In this document: in pieces, positions 29,633 to 42,700 of the stretch
Layout of the letters: each line of letters opens with the position of its first letter
How positions within the stretch are numbered: the stretch's first letter is position 1
NCBI GenBank assembly: GCA_033442325.1
Contig: JAWQFM010000003.1
Location: 2,667,657 to 2,731,540 of the forward strand
From: Salpingoeca rosetta
Lineage: Eukaryota; Protista; Choanoflagellata
Length of the DNA stretch: 63,884 nucleotides
Reading direction: 5' to 3'
Made by a program: the position numbers and the translations under genes
The notes under the pieces: generated by a model
What the model saw: only the letters and a program-made list of their open reading frames with translations
What the model was told of the DNA's origin: nothing
Database searches by the model: none

Positions 29633-30532
29633 CTAGAACATTTGTTTGCCCATGTAAGTCTGGGTGTCAAAGCCGAAGATCTCAAAGTCCTCCTTGAATC
29701 TCTTGACGACGGCCTGTGCAGCCTCCTTTGTGTAAAAGTCGGCCCGCGAGCCCTTCTCCTTGGCTGCGCGCTCGCCGGCGTTGTTGACGCGGGGCTTGTG
29801 CAGGGGGCGGTTCACAGACGCGTCAATGAGCTCCGGCACGTCCAGGATCTTGGACACGCGCACGAGGTCCTCGTTGAGATTCTCAAGGTGGCCGACAAAG
29901 TCAAACACGGGGCAGCCGCGGTTGTCGGCGTTGAACATGGCCTGTGGGCTCCAGTGCACGCTGGCGAGGAAGGAGCCCATCTTCATGGAGCCGCGGTCCG
30001 GGTCCAGCGCCCACTCGGAGAACTCCGTCGGTGTGCCGCTCTTGTCCCGCATAAAGTCGACGGCCATGGCCCATGAGGAGATGGCGCGGGAGTACGGGTT
30101 GCGCACGAAGGTGACGATCAAGTAGTCTGGATGCGCGCGCACGGACGGGGCGCAGTTGTCCACCTCATACACGCCGGGGCAGGTCGGGTCGTGGTTGCCG
30201 CACAGCCACTTCATGAATGCGCCCTTGATCTCTGACCCGCCGCTCTTCAGCACGTGCGTGACAATGAACTTGTACTTGTGCACGACGAGGCAACCAGATC
30301 CGGCCCCGCGCTGGCCGCTGATGCGCATTGTCGACGTGCGCAGGGACTCTGGCCGATGGATCAGCCCGTACGGCGCCATGGCATCCGTGTCTGGCGATCC
30401 GCCGCACCGGTGGTACTTGCACCTGTTTGTGTCCTTGTCCAGCGTCACGCAGACGTCTGCCTTGTTCCCACGCACCACGTACTCCGATGAAGATGACACC
30501 ACCGCCGCCACATCTCCGCCACCTGCTTGGCT

Positions 30533-30574
<42 letters not shown>

Positions 30575-31045
30575 AGCTTGCTGCTGCTGCTGTTGTTGTT
30601 GCTGCTGGTGCTCCTTGAGCTGTTGATGGTGCACGTCCTGTTTCTGTTCCAGCTCCTGCTGCTTGTGCTGCTGATCCCGTTGCTCAGCCTTGATGCGCTG
30701 CAACTCGGCCTCGTGCTCTTTCTCCTTCTTCACCCATGCTTGCTTCAGATGGTCGTTCTCCTGCTTTTGCTGGTGCAGCAGCGTCTCCAGCTTTTCCTGC
30801 CGCTTGACGAGATCCTGCAGCTGGCTCTGCACAACTTCGTCGCCCCCATCCCCCACTTGCCGTGGAGGCCCATGTTGCTGCTGGTGCTGCTGGTGTTGCT
30901 GTTGGTGGTGGTCTTCGTGTTCATCCCATGGCGCGGCAAGGTCTCTTGCTCTGCGCACGTCTTGGTAGTGTCGCCCGCGCTCAACAACGAGCAGCACCAC
31001 CACCACAAGCAGCACCACAGAGACGTGTCGCCACGACAGCCGCAT
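29633..31045 (-). CDS. Golgi type II membrane carbohydrate sulfotransferase (Sulfotransfer_2, CHST/HNK-1ST-like), about 470 aa, intronless
   Basis: N-terminal anchor VSVVLLVVVVLLVV, Q-rich coiled-coil stem, 5'-PSB HVLKSGGS, 3'-PB TFVRNPYSRAISSW, HWSPQ, DFVGHLENLNEDL, C-terminal FKEDFEIFGF. Confidence 0.87.
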
Positions 31046-31331
31046 GTTTTGGGTGGTCGCAGCAGTGTGTTGGCTGGGAAAAAAAGTGAGCACTACATTT
31101 TGTGGTGCTGGCTGTTGTTGTGGCCCTGGTTGTTGGCGTGTGGCGGCGGCTGTTGTGCTACCGTGTGGGTGTTTTGGTGTGGGGGCTGGTGTGCTGCATG
31201 CATGTCTTTCTTGTGGTGCTGTGTACATATTTGTTGTGTAACAACGTGCAAGCTGCGCATGAACTTTGATCGCTCGAACACAGGAGGAAGCAAGGAAGGA
31301 AGAAAGAAAGAAAGGCAGGAAGGAAGGTGTG

Positions 31332-31450
31332 CTATGCTAGCCGCAAGGTGGTGGCTGCGAAAGGGAGGTTGTCTGTCTTCTTGTACAGGTTCTCTGGAAA
31401 CGCTTGCCACATGAACCATAACGCCATACCAACCATGACCTATGTAGAGT

Positions 31451-31504
<54 letters not shown>

Positions 31505-31826
31505 CGCGCGTGTGCATGCGTGTGTATGTTACGTTGTGTACGTGTTGTGGTGTTTGTGAGATTGGCGAACTGCGTGGTTGCACATCGTAGGCAGCTGAAG
31601 TGAACAAGCATCGACATAGAAAACGGTGACATCAAGGCACTTGCCACACAAACACCAATAGCGCACGGGAGAGGCAGTTGAAGGAAAACACGCACACACA
31701 CACACACAATCAAAAGCAGAGTGAACAGCAACAGCAACGTTGACAGCGATAACACAACTCCCCCTCACGAACACACACACACACACACATACACACAAAA
31801 AAAAAAACACATGCACACATACGGAT

Positions 31827-31861
<35 letters not shown>

Positions 31862-32536
31862 TACGCGCACACAAATATACACACACACGCATATACGCAT
31901 GCACAAGCACACGCACGCACACAAATACACACACACACACAAATGTACAGATGTACACACGCACGCACAACAACACACCTGCGCAAGGCCGTGAAAGAGG
32001 CGGTACGGGTCGTGTTCGTCGTCAAGGCTGAGGTAGAAGAAGGCAGCGGCTGCTGCGAGGGAACCCAGGCCCCGGAGCACTTTCCCCCGCTGGAACGGTG
32101 GCGGCTTCACGTCCCCAACCAGCTTCACCACCATCAGCAGCACAAACACGCCCACAACATACGCCGTGTACCGCGTCTCCACCATCCAGTACCGGTCCTT
32201 GATCTGCGCAATCCACACCAGCGCAAAGGACAGGTACCGCAGCACCGTGTCGCGGGCCTCGTGGCGGTTGCCCATGAGAAAAATGCACAGGTGCAGGCCA
32301 TATGTTACGGTGAAGATGTTGGTGAGCTCGTGCCACTGGCGCCCAGACAAGAACAGCTCCACGTCCAGCGCATCTGTGAGGTTGTAGCACAGCGACGTCA
32401 CAAACTGAGCCAGGCCCACAAACAGCTCAAAGTGCCGCCCGCGCTCCGCAACCACCGCCAGGCTCGGCACAAACGCCAAGTCCGTCGTCGTCTCAAACAC
32501 AAACTTGAGCAGATGCTCAACCGTCAAGATTGCCAT
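31332..32536 (-). CDS. TMEM8/myomaker-like (DUF3522, CREST superfamily) 7TM protein, 221 aa, 2 exons (32536-31979, 31439-31332)
   Basis: [40 protein letters not shown] resembles the TMEM8/MYMK N-terminus. Seven hydrophobic segments. Spliced C-terminus [11 protein letters not shown]|[15 protein letters not shown]. Canonical phase-0 GT-AG intron. Confidence 0.78.
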
Positions 32537-32598: not shown

Positions 32599-32657
<59 letters not shown>

Positions 32658-33774
32658 ACACACACACACACAGACACACGTTCACACGTTCACACGTTCA
32701 CGCACACACTGGCTGGTTGTTGGGAGGACGGCAACCACCACTGCTGTCCCGCTGCTTGCTCTCCTTCCTTCTTTGTTGCTGTGCAGTGTTTGCCTTGTAG
32801 AGGAATGCCGAATAATATGTGGTGGAATTCTTAGGACGACAACATTCACCAATTTTCGCCTTGGTTGTGTTTGCATGCAGCCAAACAGACCGCTGTTGTT
32901 GTTGTGCGTGAAAGCTTGCAGGCAACCCCGCTTCTCTCTGCTGGCGCTTGCCACAAGCAACAAGCAAAAGCATCAGAGGAGATCGTGTGCGCGACCCAAC
33001 ACAACCAACCAGCCAACAAACAAGCAAGCAAGCAAACAAGCAAACAGACAACACGAGCGCACGGAGAGACTGCAACCAAGCACACTGAGCAGTACTTTTG
33101 ACGTGCAGTGCTCCTCCTGAGCTCTGCTCCCTCCGTGTTCCTTTGCAAAGGAGGAACGAAGAACGGGCGACGTTGGAGCCAACTGCGACTCCTCTGTTCT
33201 TCCTCTCTTTGTTGTTGTTTATTCGTTGTTGTTGTTGTTGTTGTTGTTCTCCTTCTGACCTTTTTGTGCTTGCCGCACAACCTTTCCAACGAGACAGCGA
33301 CGACAGCAACGCGCGCACAGCGCACCACTTGGATCACGACTTCAAGTTCTCACAAGAACAACGACAAACCAAGTATGTACAAACTGTGATTGTCATTGTT
33401 GTGCGTGGGTGCGGCTCTTCGTGCGCTTTGCTTGCAAGCACGTGAGTGTGCTGTGAGGCGTGATAGTCACACGTGATACGGGTGTCATCCTGCGCGTCTT
33501 GAACCTTTGAGTGTCCGGTATCTCTTCCCCCACCCACCACCACATCGTCTTTTGCTGTTTTGTTTTGACACTGCTCTGACAAGTCTGCGGCTTTTGTGAC
33601 AACTCTTGTTGTTGCTCTGTCACTACACTACTCGCGCCACCCACCCTGACGTAACCCCCCCCCCCCCATCTGCTTCTTTGTGCTTCTTTGTGCCGACTTG
33701 CTCTCTCCCCGCTCCTCCTTCTCTCTCAGGCACACCTGGCTCTTCGACTTCATTTTCGCCAAAGGCCTGCAACC

Positions 33775-36700
33775 ATGCACTCACGGCCCAATCATAGGTA
33801 TGATGTGCCTTGCGCTCACATTCTTCCTGCTTGCAGTTGAAAAGGGGGTGGGGGGGGGAGTGCAGTCTGTCCATGTGCTGCTGCTGCTTCTTCTTGTTCT
33901 TGTTCTTGTTCTTGTTCTTCTTGCGCCAGCCACGACTCACTATTCTTCCCCTCCTCGACTCACTTTACCACACGTTTCTGTCCACCACCACCACACCCAC
34001 CACCACAACAACAACAACAACCACAACCACAACCGCCACCACCACAACAACAACTTAAACAACAACAACAACAACTTAAACAACAACAACAACAACAACA
34101 ACTTAAACAACAACAAACAACAACAACTTAAACAACAACAAACAACAACAACCACGATTTCACGTTCATTAGGGCTGTGTTGAGGCCAACACCATCTGCG
34201 ACACCTGCAGCAACGACTGCGCCGCAGAAACAAAGCCATGTGCGAAGCACTGTTGCACTGGCCCACAAGCTCCTGGTTGCAGCGTGCACGCTGCTTCTTC
34301 TGCTTCTTCTGACCACGGCCGGCACTGCTTCCGGCCAAACGTGCACATTGCAGAACGCCCCTTGGGTGTACCTGGAGGCCGGCGCAGTCGCAGCCGTCGA
34401 CCCGCCGTCTGGGCAGGGCGGCTCCAGGATCACAATCACAGGAACTAACCTCCTTGGCGGCGGCACAAACATGACCCGCGTCACCCTCGCAGACATTGCT
34501 GTGGAGAACATCCTCTCCTTCAACAACACCATGGTCGTCGTGCGCGCGGCCGCGTCCCCAACAGCAACCACGGGCGACGTCCTCCTGCAATCTAACACGG
34601 GCGCAATGGTCGTCGCAAACAATTCCTTCACCTACCTCGTGCCGGGCGCCATCAACACGGTGTCCCCCAGCAGCGGTCAGGGCGGCACCTACATCACCCT
34701 GACGGGATCCCGCTTCCTCGGCGACTCTGGCATGCTCACCGCCGCCTACCTCGCCGACGTCCCGGCAGACATTGTCCGTCACAACGACTCCTTTGCCGTG
34801 TTGCGCGCCCGCCCTTCCGCCACCGCAGTGTCGGGCGACATTGTGCTTGTCGCCGCAAACGGCATCCGCGTCGTGGGCACGAACAGGTGGCGCTACGAAA
34901 CGCCGGGCTTCATCGCCGCCGCAGCGCCAAACTCGGGTGTCGTGGGTACCCGCTCGTACATCTTCGGCAACAACCTCCGCGGCTACGGCTCGCGCATCAC
35001 CAACGTCACCCTTGCCGGTGTGGATGCGCGCATTCTCGAGGAGAACAACCTCTTCGTCCGCGTCGTCGTCGCCAGCGGGCCCGACAACGCCACCGGCGAC
35101 ATTGTCGTCACCTCCGACACGGGCGCACAGGTCATCGCAGATGACGCCTGGCAGTACGTGCCGCTCGGAAACATCACCGCCCTCGAGCCCGCAGACGGTA
35201 TCACAAACACCCGCGTCACCATCCACGGCGAGAACCTCCTCAGCGGTGGCCAGTCAGTCATCCAGGTGCGCATGGCCGGCGTAGCGGCAAACATCATCTC
35301 CTACTCAGATGACCGCGTCATCGTCAACGCCGGCGCCTCAGACCTGCCAGGCACTCGCGGCGACGTCGTGCTCACCATCGACACGGGCCCCGAGGTCGTT
35401 CTGACCAACGGCTGGACCTACAACATCGTCCCTGGTGACATCTTCACCGTCGAACCAAACCGCGGCCAGCTGGGCACCCGCGTGGCCGTTGAGGGCGTCA
35501 GCCTCCTTGCCGGTGGAGACTCCATCCGCTCCATCACCATTGCTGGCGTGGAGGTCCTCAACATCACCCTACAGACCAACAACCGCGTCGAGTTTGTGGC
35601 AAACTACTCTGCCGTTGCCCAGTCCGGTGATATCATCTTCACCATCAACACGGGCGCCACCGTCCGCCGGCTCAATGGCTGGACCTTCGTCAGCCCCGCC
35701 GTCATCAACAGCAGCACCCCGGCAACGGGGCAGGTTGGCACGTACATCACCCTGCGCGGCTCAAGCCTCCTCGGCGGTGGATCAAGCATCACCTCTGCCA
35801 CCATCGGCACTGTTGCGGCGCGCTCCATCGTCTCCAGCAACGACTCCGTGGTCATCATCGAGGCGGGCCAGAACTCAACAGCCCTGGCCGGGCCGCAAGA
35901 CATTGTGCTCACGGGCAACTACCACGCCCGGATCACACACCAAGCGGCCTTTTCGTTTGTCGCCCCAAGCTTCATCACTTCGGTCTCGCCAAACCTCGGA
36001 CAGGGCGGCACGCGCGTCACCATCCGCGGCGAAGGCCTCACCGGCAGCCACAACGCAACCGCGTCAGTCTCCATCGCCGGGCAGGACGCAGAGGTGCTCA
36101 GCAGCTCGCAGACGAAAATCGTCGTTCGCGCCACTGCTCGCACCCAGGGCGTGGGCAACGTTGTGGTGCGCGCAACGGACGGTGCCCTCACCGTCAAGGA
36201 GAACGCGTTCTCTTACGCCATTCCCGGACAGGTGGATGCCGTGACTCCAAGGCAGGGCCAATATGGCACCACGGTCACCATCACGGGCCAGCGGCTGCTT
36301 GGCAGTGGCTCCTCCATCACCACGGCTTCTCTCGCTGGCGTGCAGGCGCAGATCCTCTTCAACAACAACAACACCATGATCGTGGTTCGCGCCGCGCGCG
36401 CCGCTCAGCCAACCTCCGGCCACATCATCCTCACGGCGGACACGGGCGCGCTCGTCGAGTCCACCATCAACTGGGCGTACCTGGAGGAGGGCAACGTCAC
36501 CCAGGTCTCGCCGGCTTCTGGCCAGGCGGGAACCATGGTCACCATCACGGGTACCCAGCTCAGGGGGCGGGGCTCAAGCATCGTCCTCGCCTACCTTGCT
36601 GGTGTGGAGGCCACCATCCTCTCGCAGACCGACACCCGTGTCATCGTGCAAGCAAACAACGCCAGCGCAAGCGCCCCGATGGCCGTGCAGCTCGAGGCAG

Positions 36701-39700
36701 ATTCCGGGGCCATCGTGTCTGGCGCCCCCACTTTCCGCTTCCTTGAGCGTGGCGCCATTGACTCAGTCTTTCCCGACAGCGGCCAGGACGGCACGCGCGT
36801 CACCATCACCGGCCAGCGACTCCTTGGCGGCGGCGCCTCCGTTGCTCAAGTCACCCTCGCCGATGTCCCTGTCAAGTCAATTGACTCGCAGAACGACACC
36901 TACATTGTTGTCACCGCAAATGTCAGCACCACCTTTGGCCTGGGTACCGTACGCATCACCGCAAATACGGGCGCGTTCACCGAGATGGAGGGCGCGTATC
37001 GCGCCTTGGAGACCAGCGTCATCAACCAAGTTGCGCCGTCCATCGGGCAGGCCGGAACCATTGTCACTGTGCTTGGCGAACGACTTCTCGGTGGTGGCGC
37101 AAGCATCGCCTCAGCCGTGTTTGGCACTGCACCCGCGACAGTCATGTCCTCGAACGACACGCACGTTGTGGTGGCCCTGCAGGCGGCTGCCCCCGGGCTG
37201 GTGTCGGTGCAACTGCAGGCCGACACTGGCGCTGCAACATCTCTGACAAGTGCGCTCACATACGCCGAACCAGGTAACATCACAAGTATCTCGCCAAACG
37301 TCGGGCAACTGGGCACCCTCATCACGATCAACGGTACCAACCTGCTTGCAGCTGGGTCACATATCGCCAACGTGCTGCTCGCAAATATCCCTGTGTTGGA
37401 GATTGTCAACTACACCAATACCCAAGTTGTCGTTCGCCCGAACGCGGATACTCCAGGAACGGTTGCGGTGACCATTGAATCTGACTCTGGTGCGACCACT
37501 ATTGCTGCAAACGCCTTCAACTACACGACGGCGTCGAGTGTGGCTGCGGTTGAGCCTGCGTCGGGCCAGTTTGGCACACGCGTGACCATCACGGGCGCGC
37601 GGCTGTACGGTGCAACCGGCAGCGCCGTTGTGCGCGTGCTGCTCGGCGGCGTGCCTGCAGTGATTGAGGACGAGAGCAGCACAAGCGTGACGGTGGTGGC
37701 GCAGCGAAATGCGTCTGCAGCTGTGAGCGACGAGGTGACGGTGGAGGCGGACTCTGGTGCGCTGACACGGGAGGCTGGGGCCTGGACGTACCTTGCTGAG
37801 GGCACGGTGATGGGCGTTGTGCCTGGCTTTGGACAGCTGGGGACGCGGGTCACCATCAGCGGCACGTCGCTGCTTGGCGGTGGCACGACGGCGTCCAACG
37901 TGACGCTGGCGTCTGTTGCTGTGCTTGAGATTGTGAGCTCGAGCGCGACGCAGGTTGTTGTTGTTGCTGGGAGCTCTGGCACGGCGGCGACGGGGGACGT
38001 TGTTGTTGTGTCTGACACGGGTGCGACGGTGCGCGGGAGCAACGCGTTTGAGTACCGGGAGCAGAGCGCCATCACCGGGGTGCAGCCTGCGCTTGGGCAG
38101 GTTGGCACGGTTGTGACCATCAGCGGCGAGCGGCTGCTGGGGCACGGCAGCGGCGTGAGCCGGGTGACGCTGAACGGCGTGCAGGCGATGGTGCAGAGCG
38201 CAAGCAACACGCAGGTGACGGTTGTTGCGGCGAGCGGGCCTGCCGGTGTGGGCGACGTTGTTGTGACTGCCGACACGGGAGCGCAGACGACGCTCGCGGG
38301 CGGGTTTGAGTACGCGGTGCAGGGCAACATCAGCGCGGTTGTTCCTTCGTCTGGGCAGTACAAGACGCGTGTGACGCTCCGGGGCAGCAACCTGCTTGGC
38401 AGCGGCAACAGCACGGCGAGCGTGGCGCTGGTGGGCCGGGAGGCGACGGTGCTGACGGAGAGCAACACGGAGATTGTTGTTGCAGCGGCGGCTGGGCCCG
38501 GCTCGCAGGTGACGGGCGACGTTGTGATCACGGCGGACACGGGGGCCCGGGTGGAGGAGCCCAACGGGTTTACGTACCTTGTGCCCGGGCGTGTGCAGCA
38601 GGTGCAGCCGTCGAGCGGGCGCGCGGGGACGCGGGTGACGATTGTCGGCGTGGACCTGTGCGGGCCTGAGGCGGACAGCGCAACGGCGACGCTGAATGTG
38701 ACGCTGGTTGGCATTGCTGCTGAGGTGGTGTCGACGGGCGGGTGCGGCGTTGTTGTGGTGCGCGCGGGGGACCTGGGCGCGAACATGACGGGCGACGTTG
38801 TGCTTGTGTCGAGCACGGGCGCTGAGGTGCGCGCAGTGAACGCGTTTACGTACATCTCTGAGGGCGCGATCACGAGCGTGACGCCGTCTGCGGGGCAGGG
38901 CAACACGCTTGTGACGATCCGCGGTGTGAACATGCTTGGCGGCGGCACGGGGGTTGCCTCTGTGACGCTGGCTGGTGTGACGGCGAGCGTGTTCACGGGG
39001 GTTGCCTCTGTGACGCTGGCTGGTGTGACGGCGAGCGTGTTCACGGTGCCGCCGACGGAGACTGAGATTGTGGCGCGTGCGTTTACGGGCAGCGGCCGCG
39101 GCGACGTGGTTGTTGTGAGTGACACGGGCGTGACGACGCGGCTGGTGAACGGGTGGACGTACAGCGAGGTGACGTCGGTGACGCCGTCGTACGGGCAGCG
39201 CGGAACGCGCGTGACGATTGGCGGTGTTGCGCTGACGGCTGGCGGCACGGACATCAGCAAGGTTGAGTTCAACGGGGTTGATGCGACGTCGATTGTGCGT
39301 GCGAACAGCACGGAGGTAGTTGCGGTGGCGGCGTTCAACAGCGTGCCCGGGGACGAGATGGGAGACGTGCGGCTGACGACGGACAACGGGCAGCAGGTGG
39401 TGCTGTCTGACGGGTGGACGTACCGGCCGACGGGGAGCGTCTTGTCTGTGGCGCCGTCGAGCGGGCAGGCGGGGACGCGCGTGACAATCACGGGCGACCA
39501 GCTGCTCGGGTACGGCACGGGGCTTGCGCAGGTGACGCTTGCGGGTGTGGGCGTGCGGGAGATTGTTGAGGCGAACGCGACGCGGGTTGTCGTTGTGGCG
39601 GAGGGCCGCGCGACGGCCGGTGCCGGGCTTGTTGAGCTGACGGCGGACACGGGAGCGACGGTGCGGCAGGCCAACGGGTTTACGTATGTTGCGCCGCAGA

Positions 39701-42700
39701 GCATCAGCGACGTTGTGCCGCGGACGGGCCAGGTTGGCACTGAGGTGACGATTACGGGCAGCGGGCTGCTTGGCGGCGGCAGCGCAGCGGAGGTTGTTGT
39801 GCTTGCTGGCGTGGAGGCCGAGGCTGTGTTGTCGAGCAGCAACGGCATGGTGGTTGTGTCTGCGGGCCAGTCTGCGCCGAGCAACGTGAGCAGCGTTGTT
39901 GTGACGGCGGAGACGGGGGCGACTGTGGAAGGCGCTGGGCTGTTCCAGTATGTGCGCGAGGGCGTGATCCAGAGCGTGACGCCGGCAAGCGGGCAGCGCG
40001 GCACGTATGTGACGATTGTGGGCACGGGCCTGCGCGGCAACAGCAGTGCGGTTGCGGGCGTTGTTGTTGGCGGCGTACCGGCAACGAGCGTTGTATCTGA
40101 GGCCGACGAGGTTGTGGTTGCGCGGCTTGACTCCGCGGGTGCGCAGAGCATGGTTGATGTGCAGGTGACTGGGACGAGCGGGGCGCGCGTTGTTGCTGCG
40201 GGGGCGTTTGAGTACCTTGAGGAGGGCCGCGTGACGAGCGCGGTGCCTGCTGGGGGCCAGATTGGCACTGTGGTGACGCTGGGCGGCGAGCGGCTGCTTG
40301 GCTGGGGCGCGAACGTGAGCCGGGTGACCGTGGGTGGCTCGGCTGTGCGGCGGGTTGTGTCTGCGAGCGACAGCGCTGTTGTGGTTGAGCTTGGGCGCGC
40401 GAGTGGCGGGAGCCAGGGCGTTGTGATTGAGAGCGACACTGGGGCGCTTGTGCAGAACGGCAGCCTGGTGACGTACCTGAGCGAGGGCCGCGTGTCGCGG
40501 GTTGAGCCGTCGAGCGGACGGGAAGGCACCGTGGTGACGCTGTTTGGCAGCGGGCTGCGGGGCGGCAGCAGCGGGGTGTCTGCGGCGCGGATTGGCGCTG
40601 TTGCGCTTCGCGTGCTGCAGGAGAACGACACTGTTGTTGTTGCTGTGATGGGCCGTGGCGGGCAGACGGGCGTTGCGGAGAACGTGACGGTTGTCGGTGC
40701 GAGCGGCGCGCTTGTGTCTGGTGCGGGCCTGTTTACGCCTGTGGGAGCCGGCGCGATTGCGACGGTGAGCCCGACGAGCGGGCAGTACGGGACGCGGGTG
40801 AACATCAGCGGCACGGGGCTGCTGGGCGGCGGCAGCACGGCACAGGCTGTTGAGCTGGGTGGCACGGCGGCGCTGAGCATTGTGAGCGCGAGCGAGACAC
40901 TGGTGCGGGTTGTTGCGAATAGCAGCCGCGCGCTTGGGCTCGGGAGCGTGCGGATCACGGCGGACACGGGGGCTGTGATTGAGCGGAACGCGACGTGGAC
41001 GGGCCTTGAGGACGGTGCGATTGTGCGCGTTGATCCGGCGAGCGGGCAGGCGGGCACGGTTGTGACGATTGCGGGCGTGCGCCTGCGCGGGGGCTCCTCT
41101 GGCGTTGCCAGCGTGACGCTTGCTGGGCGAGGCGTGCGGGAGATTGTGTCTGAGAACGAGACTGCCGTTGTTGTTGTTTGCGATGGCGGCGTTGCTGGCG
41201 CCGGGGATGTTGTGCTGACGGGCGCGAGCGGCGCTGTTGTGCGCGCGATGGCGGCGTTTGAGGTGCTTGAGGGCGGCGTTGTGACGGGGGTGACTCCGTC
41301 GCAGGGTGTGCTCGGCACGTTTGTGACGGTGACTGGGGAGCGGCTGCTTGGCGGCGGGGCGAGCGTTGCGCGGGTGATGCTTGCTGGTGCGGTTGCTGAA
41401 CAGGTGGTGTCTGCCAACTCGACGCGGGTTGTTGTTCGGGCTGGCGCGCCGGCTGGGATGGTGCCGCAGAACGGCAGCGTGGTGATTGTGAGCGACAGCG
41501 GGGCGGTCGTTGAGGCAGCGGACTCGTTTGAATACGGCGTTGCTGGCGTTGTGGCGAGCGTGAGCCCTGCGTATGGGCAGCTTGACACAGTTGTGACGAT
41601 CCGCGGCAGCGGGCTGCTGTCTGGCGGGCAGCATCTTGTGTCTGTGGTCCTGGCTGGTGTTGCGGCGAAGCAGATTGTGAGCTTCAACGCGACGCAGGCT
41701 GTTGTGGTTGCCAACGCATCTGCGACTGCGAGCTCGCTTGTGGGCGACGTTGTGCTTGTGAGCGAGACGGGCGGCCGCGCTGTCGGCGCCAACATGTGGG
41801 AGTACCGGGCGCAGGGCCGCATTTACGACGTGTCACCAAGCACGGGCAACAGTGGTACAAGCGTGCTTATTGTTGGTGAGAACCTGCTCGGCCATGGCAC
41901 TGGAGTGGAGAGCGTGACTCTTGGCGGCGTGGAAGCTGAGGTGCTGAGCGCAACGAACTTCTTCGTTCGCGTGGTCGCTGGGGCAGGCAACACGATGAGT
42001 GGCAACTCGATTGTGCTGACGTCTGACACGGGATCAACTGTGGCGCTTGCTGGCAGCTGGACGTACAGTGCGCCCGCACAGATTGATGCAGTGCAGCCCG
42101 CGGCTGGCCAGGCTGGCACGAGAGTGACAGTGACCGGCATGTCGCTGCTTCAGGGCGGTGCGCGCATTGCGACCGCACGCCTTGCTGGATATGTGGCGAC
42201 TGTGCTGAGCTCGAACGAGACGCGCGTTGTTGTGCAAGCGCCGGCCGGGTCTGGTGAAGAAATGCTTGGCGACGTTGTGCTCGTGAACGAGCATGGCGCG
42301 ACTGTGACTGCAAGCAACGCTTGGACACAGCTAGAGCCGTCTGACATTGACGTTGTTGCACCGGTTGTTGGCCAGGCTGGCTCGATCGTGACCATCACTG
42401 GCCGACGCCTTGCTGGTAGCGGCGACAGCGTGAGCGAGGTTGAGCTTGTCGGCGTACCTGCTGCACGCATTGTGTCTGCGAATGAGAGCACGGTTGTTGT
42501 TGAGGCTGGCGTGAATGCGGCGGCTAATGCAGCGGCGGTGCGAGGCAGCGTTGTGATTCGCCTGGGCGGCGGTGCCGAAATTGTTCGCTTCAGGCATTCA
42601 CATTTGCAACACCTGGTGTTGTGAGCAGCGTGGTCCCCGGCGAGGGCCAGCTGGGGACGTATGTGACGATTGCGGGCAGCGGCCTGCTGAGCGGCAGCCG

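What the first reader, a model, noticed from the sequence alone, without database searches (positions are those of the whole stretch)
31332..32536. Myomaker-like, ectodomain-less TMEM8 protein with degenerate catalytic residues: candidate unicellular membrane-fusion factor
Seen in sequence: a two-exon gene encodes a 221-aa 7TM protein with no EGF or other ectodomain. Its N-terminus ([32 protein letters not shown]) aligns by eye with vertebrate myomaker (LLLPTLSSLAFLPTVSIAAKRRFHMEAMV). The CREST hydrolase motifs SxxxH / D / HxxxH read SLCYN, WHELTN and HGLAQ, so two of the three Zn-binding His and the catalytic Asp are replaced. Established: TMEM8A/PGAP6 is a GPI phospholipase with a large ectodomain, whereas myomaker (TMEM8C, 221 aa in human) is the short family member that drives myoblast fusion. 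Inference: this is a non-catalytic short TMEM8 in a probable choanoflagellate that could act in membrane apposition, gamete fusion or lipid sensing. Caveats: short DUF3522 proteins also occur in other protists, the residues lost differ from those lost in myomaker, and the C-terminal Cys cluster of myomaker is absent.
Basis: partly seen in the sequence, partly recalled or inferred. Interest (0 to 1): 0.85.

Follow-up and report, generated by a model that had tools for sequence, protein, structure and literature searches.

The report
Short DUF3522 membrane protein, not myomaker
This is a real, expressed choanoflagellate gene for a small seven-helix membrane protein of the DUF3522/TMEM8 family, but it belongs to an old, widespread protist branch that lost the usual zinc-site residues, and nothing links it to the vertebrate cell-fusion protein myomaker beyond shared family and small size.

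Summary
A two-exon minus-strand gene (32536-31979, 31439-31332) encodes a 221-aa protein. RNA contigs and reads confirm the splice and a poly(A) site at 31207. Exon 1 matches Pfam DUF3522 at E 4.7e-48. There is no ectodomain. Of the CREST catalytic residues, S48 and H182 are kept, while H52 is N, D72 is T and H186 is Q.

The myomaker and fusion reading is not supported. The closest relatives are 221-224-aa choanoflagellate orthologues, including Monosiga brevicollis MONBRDRAFT_25649. Next come short DUF3522 proteins of Amoeba, Diplonema, chytrids and marine protists. These short proteins split into two groups:
- A canonical group, with trypanosomatids, keeps all catalytic residues.
- A second group, holding the choanoflagellates, has lost conservation of the zinc site and gained an invariant RHFE / RY / D motif set.

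Mouse myomaker is not detected by the protein alone or by a choanoflagellate profile. It scores 38-40 bits against the canonical group and 17-23 bits against the choanoflagellate group. Published work places myomaker's origin in a chordate Tmem8 duplication. The gene is the only DUF3522 locus found in its genome and is transcribed in RNA runs of several studies.

Verdict: an ordinary member of a known but uncharacterised family.

The parts
31979..32536 (-). Coding exon 1 (186 codons): TM1-TM6 and the first turn of TM7; carries the whole Pfam DUF3522 match
   Evidence: Translation; Pfam E 4.7e-48; RNA depth and contigs
31440..31978 (-). Intron (GT...AG, 539 nt), rich in (GT)n/(CA)n microsatellite
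   Evidence: Sequence; zero RNA depth and contig joints 31437|31977 in runs X8 and X11; loose ends of raw reads. The intron lies at the same protein position (after HGLAQ) in related species, judged from read-through gene calls P0001 and P0002
31332..31439 (-). Coding exon 2 (35 codons plus TAG): rest of TM7 and the cytosolic tail with the conserved WQ..P....YKK.D motif
   Evidence: Translation; matches the C-termini of P0003, P0004 and P0005; RNA
31207..31331 (-). 3' UTR, with the poly(A) addition site at 31207
   Evidence: RNA contig of run X11 carries 21 T (plus-strand view) before 31207; read depth
32537..32808 (-). 5' UTR: shown to 32584. It probably continues through a (TG)n repeat (about 32608-32674, unmappable) to about 32808. 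It contains no ATG, and an in-frame TGA lies just upstream of 32599
   Evidence: RNA contigs reach 32584; same-strand reads at 32675-32808 with similar depth; sequence. Continuity across the repeat is inferred

Best explanation
The gene encodes a 221-aa, seven-helix, CREST-fold membrane protein of the DUF3522 (TMEM8-related) family. It belongs to a pan-eukaryotic set of short, domain-only DUF3522 proteins, probably the 'hypothetical group 3' of Pei et al. 2011. Within that set it falls in the sub-group called clade II here. In clade II the outer-leaflet zinc/hydrolase site (S-x-x-x-H, D, H-x-x-x-H) is no longer conserved. A different residue set has become nearly invariant instead: R34-H35-F36-E37 at the cytosolic start of TM2, R100-Y101 and F104 in the cytosolic half of TM4, and D114. 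The family-wide W68-H69 is kept. Shown: gene model, expression, family membership, fold (on a 68%-identical orthologue), residue states and the clade pattern. Inferred: topology is N-out/C-in, as in myomaker and as the positive-inside rule predicts. The protein is most likely not a His3-zinc lipid hydrolase. It more likely acts as a lipid-binding or regulatory membrane protein whose conserved function has moved towards the cytosolic face. It is a constitutively transcribed single-copy gene, not a myomaker orthologue, and there is no evidence that it is a fusogen.
For: Pfam DUF3522, 164 bits. Orthologues of 221-224 aa at 57-68% identity in four other choanoflagellates, including M. brevicollis. 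The exhaustive HMM search gave 466 representatives at E<=1e-3, and nearly all of the best 150 are 200-250 aa. Named hits are Diplonema papillatum, Amoeba proteus, Lapot gusevi, chytrids (Gorgonomyces, Lobulomycetales), MMETSP protists and trypanosomatids. AF2 model of orthologue P0003: pLDDT 91.9, pTM 0.88, 7 helices. Best PDB matches are myomaker (TM 0.65-0.75, 9-16% identity), then ACER3. The ML tree separates clade I from clade II with 100 SH-aLRT, and the choanoflagellates form one clade at 96-99. In clade I, S48, H52, D72, H182 and H186 are each conserved in 0.96-0.98 of sequences. In clade II the same positions have top-residue fractions of 0.36-0.68, while H35 is 0.93, R100 0.96, Y101 1.00, F104 0.95 and D114 1.00. 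Loop charges fit N-out/C-in: K+R 7 against 3, D+E 3 against 7. There is one DUF3522 locus in the 55.4-Mb genome with either profile. RNA coverage is seen in runs of several studies.
Against: Function is inferred from residue patterns only, and no member of the short family has been studied. Residue positions relative to the membrane come from helix boundaries of a model of an orthologue, not from measured distances. Choanoflagellates keep S48, H69, H182 and the acidic D172-D173-x-x-D176 loop, so an unconventional metal site or hydrolase cannot be excluded. Choanoflagellates lack the clade II H86 (they have F). The exact branch point of the choanoflagellates is unresolved: an AU test does not reject placing them next to clade I (p 0.47). 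No joint tree with TMEM8A/B/MYMK could be built. Run metadata were coded, so 'constitutive' means only that the gene is transcribed in RNA runs from several studies.
Confidence: 0.65

Rival explanations
1. It is still an active intramembrane lipid hydrolase. It would use a re-built site from S48, H69, H182 and the acidic TM6-TM7 loop (D172, D173, D176), possibly with N52 and Q186 as second-shell or metal-binding residues.
For: S48, H69, D172, D173, D176 and H182 are invariant among the choanoflagellate orthologues. W68-H69 is nearly invariant across the whole short family. All of these residues lie at the outer ends of TM2, TM3 and TM7.
Against: Two of the three canonical zinc ligands and the Asp are gone. 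Across clade II these positions are poorly conserved and differ between sub-clades (H182 becomes L/M in one, H186 becomes Q/N in others), which is not the pattern of a maintained active site.
Confidence: 0.22
2. It is the choanoflagellate orthologue of animal TMEM8 that lost its EGF ectodomain secondarily. That would make it co-orthologous to TMEM8A, TMEM8B and myomaker.
For: It is the only DUF3522 gene detected in the genome. Capsaspora and animals are reported to have an EGF-type Tmem8 (10.1101/2021.07.24.453587). Pei et al. found group 3 to be sister to TMEM8 (PMC3146951).
Against: Its nearest relatives are short proteins of distant eukaryotic supergroups that share the same derived residue set. 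The simplest explanation is an old short paralogue kept in choanoflagellates. Myomaker, a TMEM8 derivative, is closer to clade I than to clade II. This was not tested with TMEM8A/B sequences.
Confidence: 0.09
3. One reading: a myomaker-like factor that promotes membrane apposition or fusion, for example of gametes, in a unicellular relative of animals.
For: It shares family, fold and small size with myomaker. Myomaker's own mechanism may be lipid binding rather than hydrolysis (PMC13562381).
Against: There is no specific kinship. Fusogenicity is reported as a chordate neofunctionalisation that is absent from amphioxus Tmem8 and tunicate Tmem8-related (10.1101/2021.07.24.453587). The residues kept and lost differ from those of myomaker. 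There are no C-terminal cysteines. The gene is transcribed in RNA runs of several studies.
Confidence: 0.04

Closest known systems
CREST 'hypothetical group 3' (Pei, Millay, Olson, Grishin 2011, PMC3146951): short protist DUF3522-type proteins from Trypanosoma, Toxoplasma, Paramecium and Monosiga brevicollis
   Same: [quoted passage not shown] A 60%-identical M. brevicollis orthologue exists (P0005), and trypanosomatid 221-aa proteins fall in the same family.
   Different: The paper describes universal conservation of the His/Asp set. The choanoflagellate branch and the rest of clade II lack H52 and D72, and often H186 or H182. The supplement listing the group members was cut, so identity of the M. 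brevicollis entry could not be verified.
Myomaker / TMEM8C (PDB 8T03-8T07)
   Same: DUF3522 family, 221 aa, no ectodomain, same 7TM fold (TM-score 0.65-0.75 for the orthologue model), same TM1 motif register, and N-out/C-in topology with the site on the outer side.
   Different: Identity is 9-16%. Myomaker keeps all three His and binds zinc but lacks Ser and Asp; this protein keeps Ser and one His. Myomaker lacks the W-H motif (L-E in mouse). It has a C-terminal Cys cluster. It is of chordate-specific origin and expressed in muscle.
TMEM8A/PGAP6 and TMEM8B/NGX6
   Same: DUF3522 transmembrane domain.
   Different: They carry a large extracellular region with an EGF-like domain and the full H3-S-D set, and PGAP6 is a GPI-specific phospholipase A2 (PMC13562381). 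Neither feature is present here.
Alkaline ceramidase ACER3 and adiponectin receptors (CREST superfamily)
   Same: Seven-helix CREST fold. ACER3 is the next PDB match after myomaker (TMq 0.59).
   Different: There is no sequence-level match. Their zinc site faces the cytosolic leaflet, with the opposite topology, and their full catalytic set is present.

Membership tests
Pfam DUF3522 (PF12036; TMEM8-related CREST branch) | HMM match above the curated gathering score over the whole domain | tested here: met
   164.2 bits against a cut-off of 29.3; profile positions 1-186 of 188
Pfam DUF3522 (PF12036; TMEM8-related CREST branch) | Seven-helix CREST fold | tested here: met
   AF2 model of the 68%-identical orthologue P0003: 7 helices, pLDDT 91.9. 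The top PDB matches are myomaker and ACER3. The window protein itself could not be folded because the spliced sequence has no reference
CREST metal-dependent hydrolases | H3-S-D set: S-x-x-x-H (TM2), D (TM3), H-x-x-x-H (TM7) | tested here: not met
   S48 present, H52->N, D72->T, H182 present, H186->Q
Myomaker (TMEM8C) orthologue | Phylogenetic position inside the chordate MymK clade derived from the Tmem8 duplication | tested here: not met
   Groups with protist short proteins. No phmmer or choanoflagellate-profile hit to myomaker at E<=10. Clade II profile 17-23 bits against clade I profile 38-40 bits. A joint tree with TMEM8A/B/MYMK was not possible
Myomaker (TMEM8C) orthologue | Three zinc-binding His kept, with Ser->Val and Asp->Ser | tested here: not met
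   Only H182 of the three His is kept, and Ser is kept (PMC13562381)
Myomaker (TMEM8C) orthologue | C-terminal cysteine cluster | tested here: not met
   No Cys in residues 197-221
Myomaker (TMEM8C) orthologue | Fusogenic activity | not testable with these tools
   Needs a cell-fusion assay
TMEM8A/PGAP6-type | Large N-terminal ectodomain with an EGF-like domain | tested here: not met
   TM1 starts at residue 6. There is an in-frame stop upstream and no upstream ATG, and the transcript is contiguous with the genome upstream of the ATG, shown to 32584
CREST hypothetical group 3 (Pei et al. 2011) | Short single-domain protist protein clustering with the M. brevicollis, Trypanosoma and Paramecium members, sister to TMEM8 | tested here: inconclusive
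   The M. brevicollis orthologue and trypanosomatid relatives are in the same family. The paper's member list was cut before this group

The most novel reading that the evidence does not exclude
The short DUF3522 protein acts in membrane apposition or fusion (for example gamete fusion) in choanoflagellates. A lipid-handling 7TM of this family would then have been used for cell fusion before animals arose. A milder and more likely novel reading (about 0.3): clade II is a pan-eukaryotic family of non-hydrolytic CREST 'pseudo-enzymes' with a new cytosolic-face functional site.
Probability: 0.04. Interest if true: 0.85.

Novelty: new member of a known kind. Interest (0 to 1): 0.28.

Why it matters
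As a candidate pre-animal fusogen it would have been striking, but the evidence points away from that reading. Two modest results remain. First, the case shows that small size within DUF3522 is an old and widespread state, not a myomaker hallmark. Second, it identifies a broad, unstudied branch of the CREST superfamily, found in choanoflagellates, amoebae, diplonemids, chytrids and marine protists. That branch has given up the conserved zinc site and fixed a new motif set. It would be a natural test case for how CREST hydrolases turn into non-enzymatic membrane proteins, which is the same question that is still open for myomaker itself.

Tried and rejected
- A phmmer search of exon 1 and a six-sequence choanoflagellate profile against PDB sequences found no myomaker at E<=10. 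Only broader profiles reached it.
- Two word-indexed profile searches meant to fetch named MYMK/TMEM8A/B sequences returned only short protist proteins.
- The spliced 221-aa protein has no reference. Database tools therefore received exon 1 (186 aa), and the fold was made on orthologue P0003. The full spliced protein was used only inside scripts.
- The ESM Atlas structure search gave no meaningful matches. The Atlas feature search only re-found DUF3522 clusters.
- The supplement of Pei et al. was cut before group 3.
- The AU test with the mixture model on 108 rows did not finish. A 50-row LG+G4 version ran and did not reject placing the choanoflagellates next to clade I, so I do not claim a resolved position within clade II.
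- The idea that H35 replaces H52 as a metal ligand was rejected. The two residues covary between clades, but H35 lies at the cytosolic start of TM2 and position 52 near its outer end.
- Earlier scan notes returned nothing for this place or for these words.

Full report
**1. What is there**

On the minus strand an ATG at 32536 opens a 186-codon exon that ends ...GCGCAG|GT at 31979. After a 539-nt GT...AG intron (31978-31440), largely made of (GT)n/(CA)n repeats, a second exon (31439-31332) adds 35 codons and a TAG. The spliced product is 221 aa.

RNA evidence supports this model:
- Assembled contigs from two runs of different studies join 31437|31977. Because GT occurs on both sides, this is the same joint as 31439|31979.
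- One contig ends in a poly(A) tail at 31207.
- Raw stranded RNA-seq reads from two further runs cover both exons on one strand and give zero depth across 31469-31937.
- Four raw reads run from 31977 into the first bases of exon 2.

The leader contains no ATG, and a TGA lies in frame just upstream of 32599, so no longer N-terminus is possible. Transcriptome-derived orthologues marked complete are 221-224 aa and continue after HG(L/I)AQ with the same tail as exon 2.

**2. Family and fold**

Exon 1 matches Pfam DUF3522 end to end (E 4.7e-48, 164 bits). The spliced protein cannot be passed to tools by reference, so I folded the 68%-identical, gap-free, 221-aa orthologue P0003 with a 76-sequence alignment. 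The model has pLDDT 91.9 and pTM 0.88, with seven helices at 6-31, 35-57, 65-87, 93-114, 123-141, 150-170 and 180-196.

Foldseek against the PDB puts mouse and Ciona myomaker first (TM 0.65-0.75, 9-16% identity), followed by ACER3. Among the PDB hits, myomaker is the only DUF3522 protein, and the 2026 review lists no structure for TMEM8A/B, so any family member would be expected to hit it first. Loop charges fit an N-out/C-in topology: K+R is 7 on the inferred cytosolic side and 3 outside, and D+E is 3 and 7.

**3. Catalytic residues**

A family profile aligns with mouse myomaker over its whole length (E 1e-10). The 2026 CREST review states that myomaker has Ser->Val and Asp->Ser but keeps three His and binds zinc (PMC13562381). 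Together these fix the five CREST positions, in window-protein numbering, as 48, 52, 72, 182 and 186. The window protein reads S, N, T, H, Q.

The only correction is that the Asp position is the T of WHELTN. All choanoflagellate orthologues share these states, so this is a conserved condition and not decay in one genome.

**4. Relatives**

The nearest proteins are from choanoflagellates.

An exhaustive profile search of 1.8 billion representatives gave 466 hits at E<=1e-3. Nearly all of the best 150 are 200-250 aa. The few longer ones carry no EGF-like N-terminus and look like gene-model extensions or fusions. Named members come from:
- Diplonema papillatum, Amoeba proteus and MMETSP protists
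- Lapot gusevi and a chytrid
- Lobulomycetales
- trypanosomatids

This fits the 'hypothetical group 3' of the CREST paper: short protist proteins including Trypanosoma, Paramecium and M. brevicollis, sister to TMEM8 (PMC3146951). I could not check the member list itself.

**5. Two kinds of short DUF3522 proteins**

A maximum-likelihood tree of 108 near-full-length sequences has one branch with 100 SH-aLRT that separates 52 sequences (clade I) from 56 (clade II). The choanoflagellates form one group inside clade II (96).

| Feature | Clade I | Clade II |
|---|---|---|
| Canonical site (S48, H52, D72, H182, H186) | each conserved in 0.96-0.98 of sequences | top residue reaches only 0.36-0.68 |
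| Other conserved residues | W68-H69, N73, D176 | W68-H69 kept (0.89) |
| Residue at 52 and 72 | H and D | mostly N at 52; S, T or N at 72 |
| Newly fixed residues | none | R34 0.84, H35 0.93, F36 0.93, E37 0.86, R100 0.96, Y101 1.00, F104 0.95, D114 1.00 |

By the helix boundaries of the model, the RHFE and RY/F residues lie in the cytosolic half of TM2 and TM4, and D114 lies at the outer end of TM4. This placement is inferred and was not measured.

H35 covaries with loss of H52, but it sits at the opposite end of TM2, so it cannot replace H52 as a ligand.

A 50-row AU test did not reject a tree with the choanoflagellates next to clade I (p 0.47). Their branch point at the base of clade II is therefore unresolved. 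The shared derived residues are the stronger argument for placing them in clade II.

**6. Relation to myomaker**

The window protein alone and a choanoflagellate profile do not detect myomaker at E<=10. The clade I profile scores it at 38-40 bits and the clade II profile at 17-23 bits.

Zhang et al. report the following (10.1101/2021.07.24.453587):
- MymK arose by duplication of an ancestral EGF-bearing Tmem8 gene in the tunicate+vertebrate ancestor.
- Capsaspora, fungi, plants and invertebrates have EGF-type Tmem8.
- Amphioxus Tmem8 and tunicate Tmem8-related are not fusogenic.

Small size in myomaker is thus a late, secondary loss, while in this family small size is the rule. The kept and lost residues differ, the W-H motif is absent from myomaker, and the tail has no cysteines.

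**7. Genome and expression**

Both the Pfam model and the clade I profile find only this locus in the 55.4-Mb assembly. The caveat is that intron-split genes are matched exon by exon. The stretch is held by runs of six studies, and about half of the words are held in many runs, as expected for the spliced mRNA. Run metadata are coded, so stage-specific expression could not be examined.

**8. Conclusion**

The link to myomaker and to fusion is not supported.

The most likely mechanism is inferred and carries moderate confidence. The protein is a lipid-facing 7TM protein whose ancestral outer-leaflet zinc site has been relaxed, and whose conserved function now depends on a cytosolic-side residue cluster plus W68-H69. 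An unconventional hydrolase remains a live alternative.

Noticed in passing
window 29633-31228 (-): The downstream neighbour is a Sulfotransfer_2 (PF03567, E 1e-15) protein with a long poly-Q/coiled-coil stretch. RNA contigs start near 31052-31066, so the real start is probably the ATG at 31042 (MRLSW..., a type II membrane anchor). That is about 150 bp from the poly(A) site of the DUF3522 gene.
   Followed up: partly
window 34177-42624 (+): A single 2815-aa open frame carries 19 IPT/TIG repeats (PF01833, E 3e-175). It looks like a giant cell-surface protein.
   Followed up: partly
window 31441-31525, 31680-31951, 32608-32674: Long (GT)n/(CA)n microsatellites fill much of the intron and interrupt the 5' leader. 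Read mapping is cut there. Prokaryote-style ORF callers read through the intron, as in the metagenome gene calls P0001 and P0002 of related species.
   Followed up: no
window 32675-32808 (-): Same-strand RNA of similar depth lies upstream of the (TG)n repeat. It is probably the continuation of the 5' UTR, but continuity across the repeat is not shown.
   Followed up: partly
ESM Atlas clusters: One DUF3522 cluster near this protein (277 aa, 50 members) has Nucleocytoviricota as its commonest known phylum. Giant viruses may therefore carry short DUF3522 genes.
   Followed up: no
P0040 (Gorgonomyces haynaldii KAI8908413.1): The annotated 434-aa chytrid protein combines a DUF3522 domain with an NSRP1_N domain. 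This is probably a fused gene model rather than a true architecture.
   Followed up: no
P0165, P0166, P0201 (JGI metagenome proteins): Some short DUF3522 proteins are labelled 'membrane channel-forming protein YqfA (hemolysin III family)' by their source. This reflects the CREST relationship, not a tested function.
   Followed up: no
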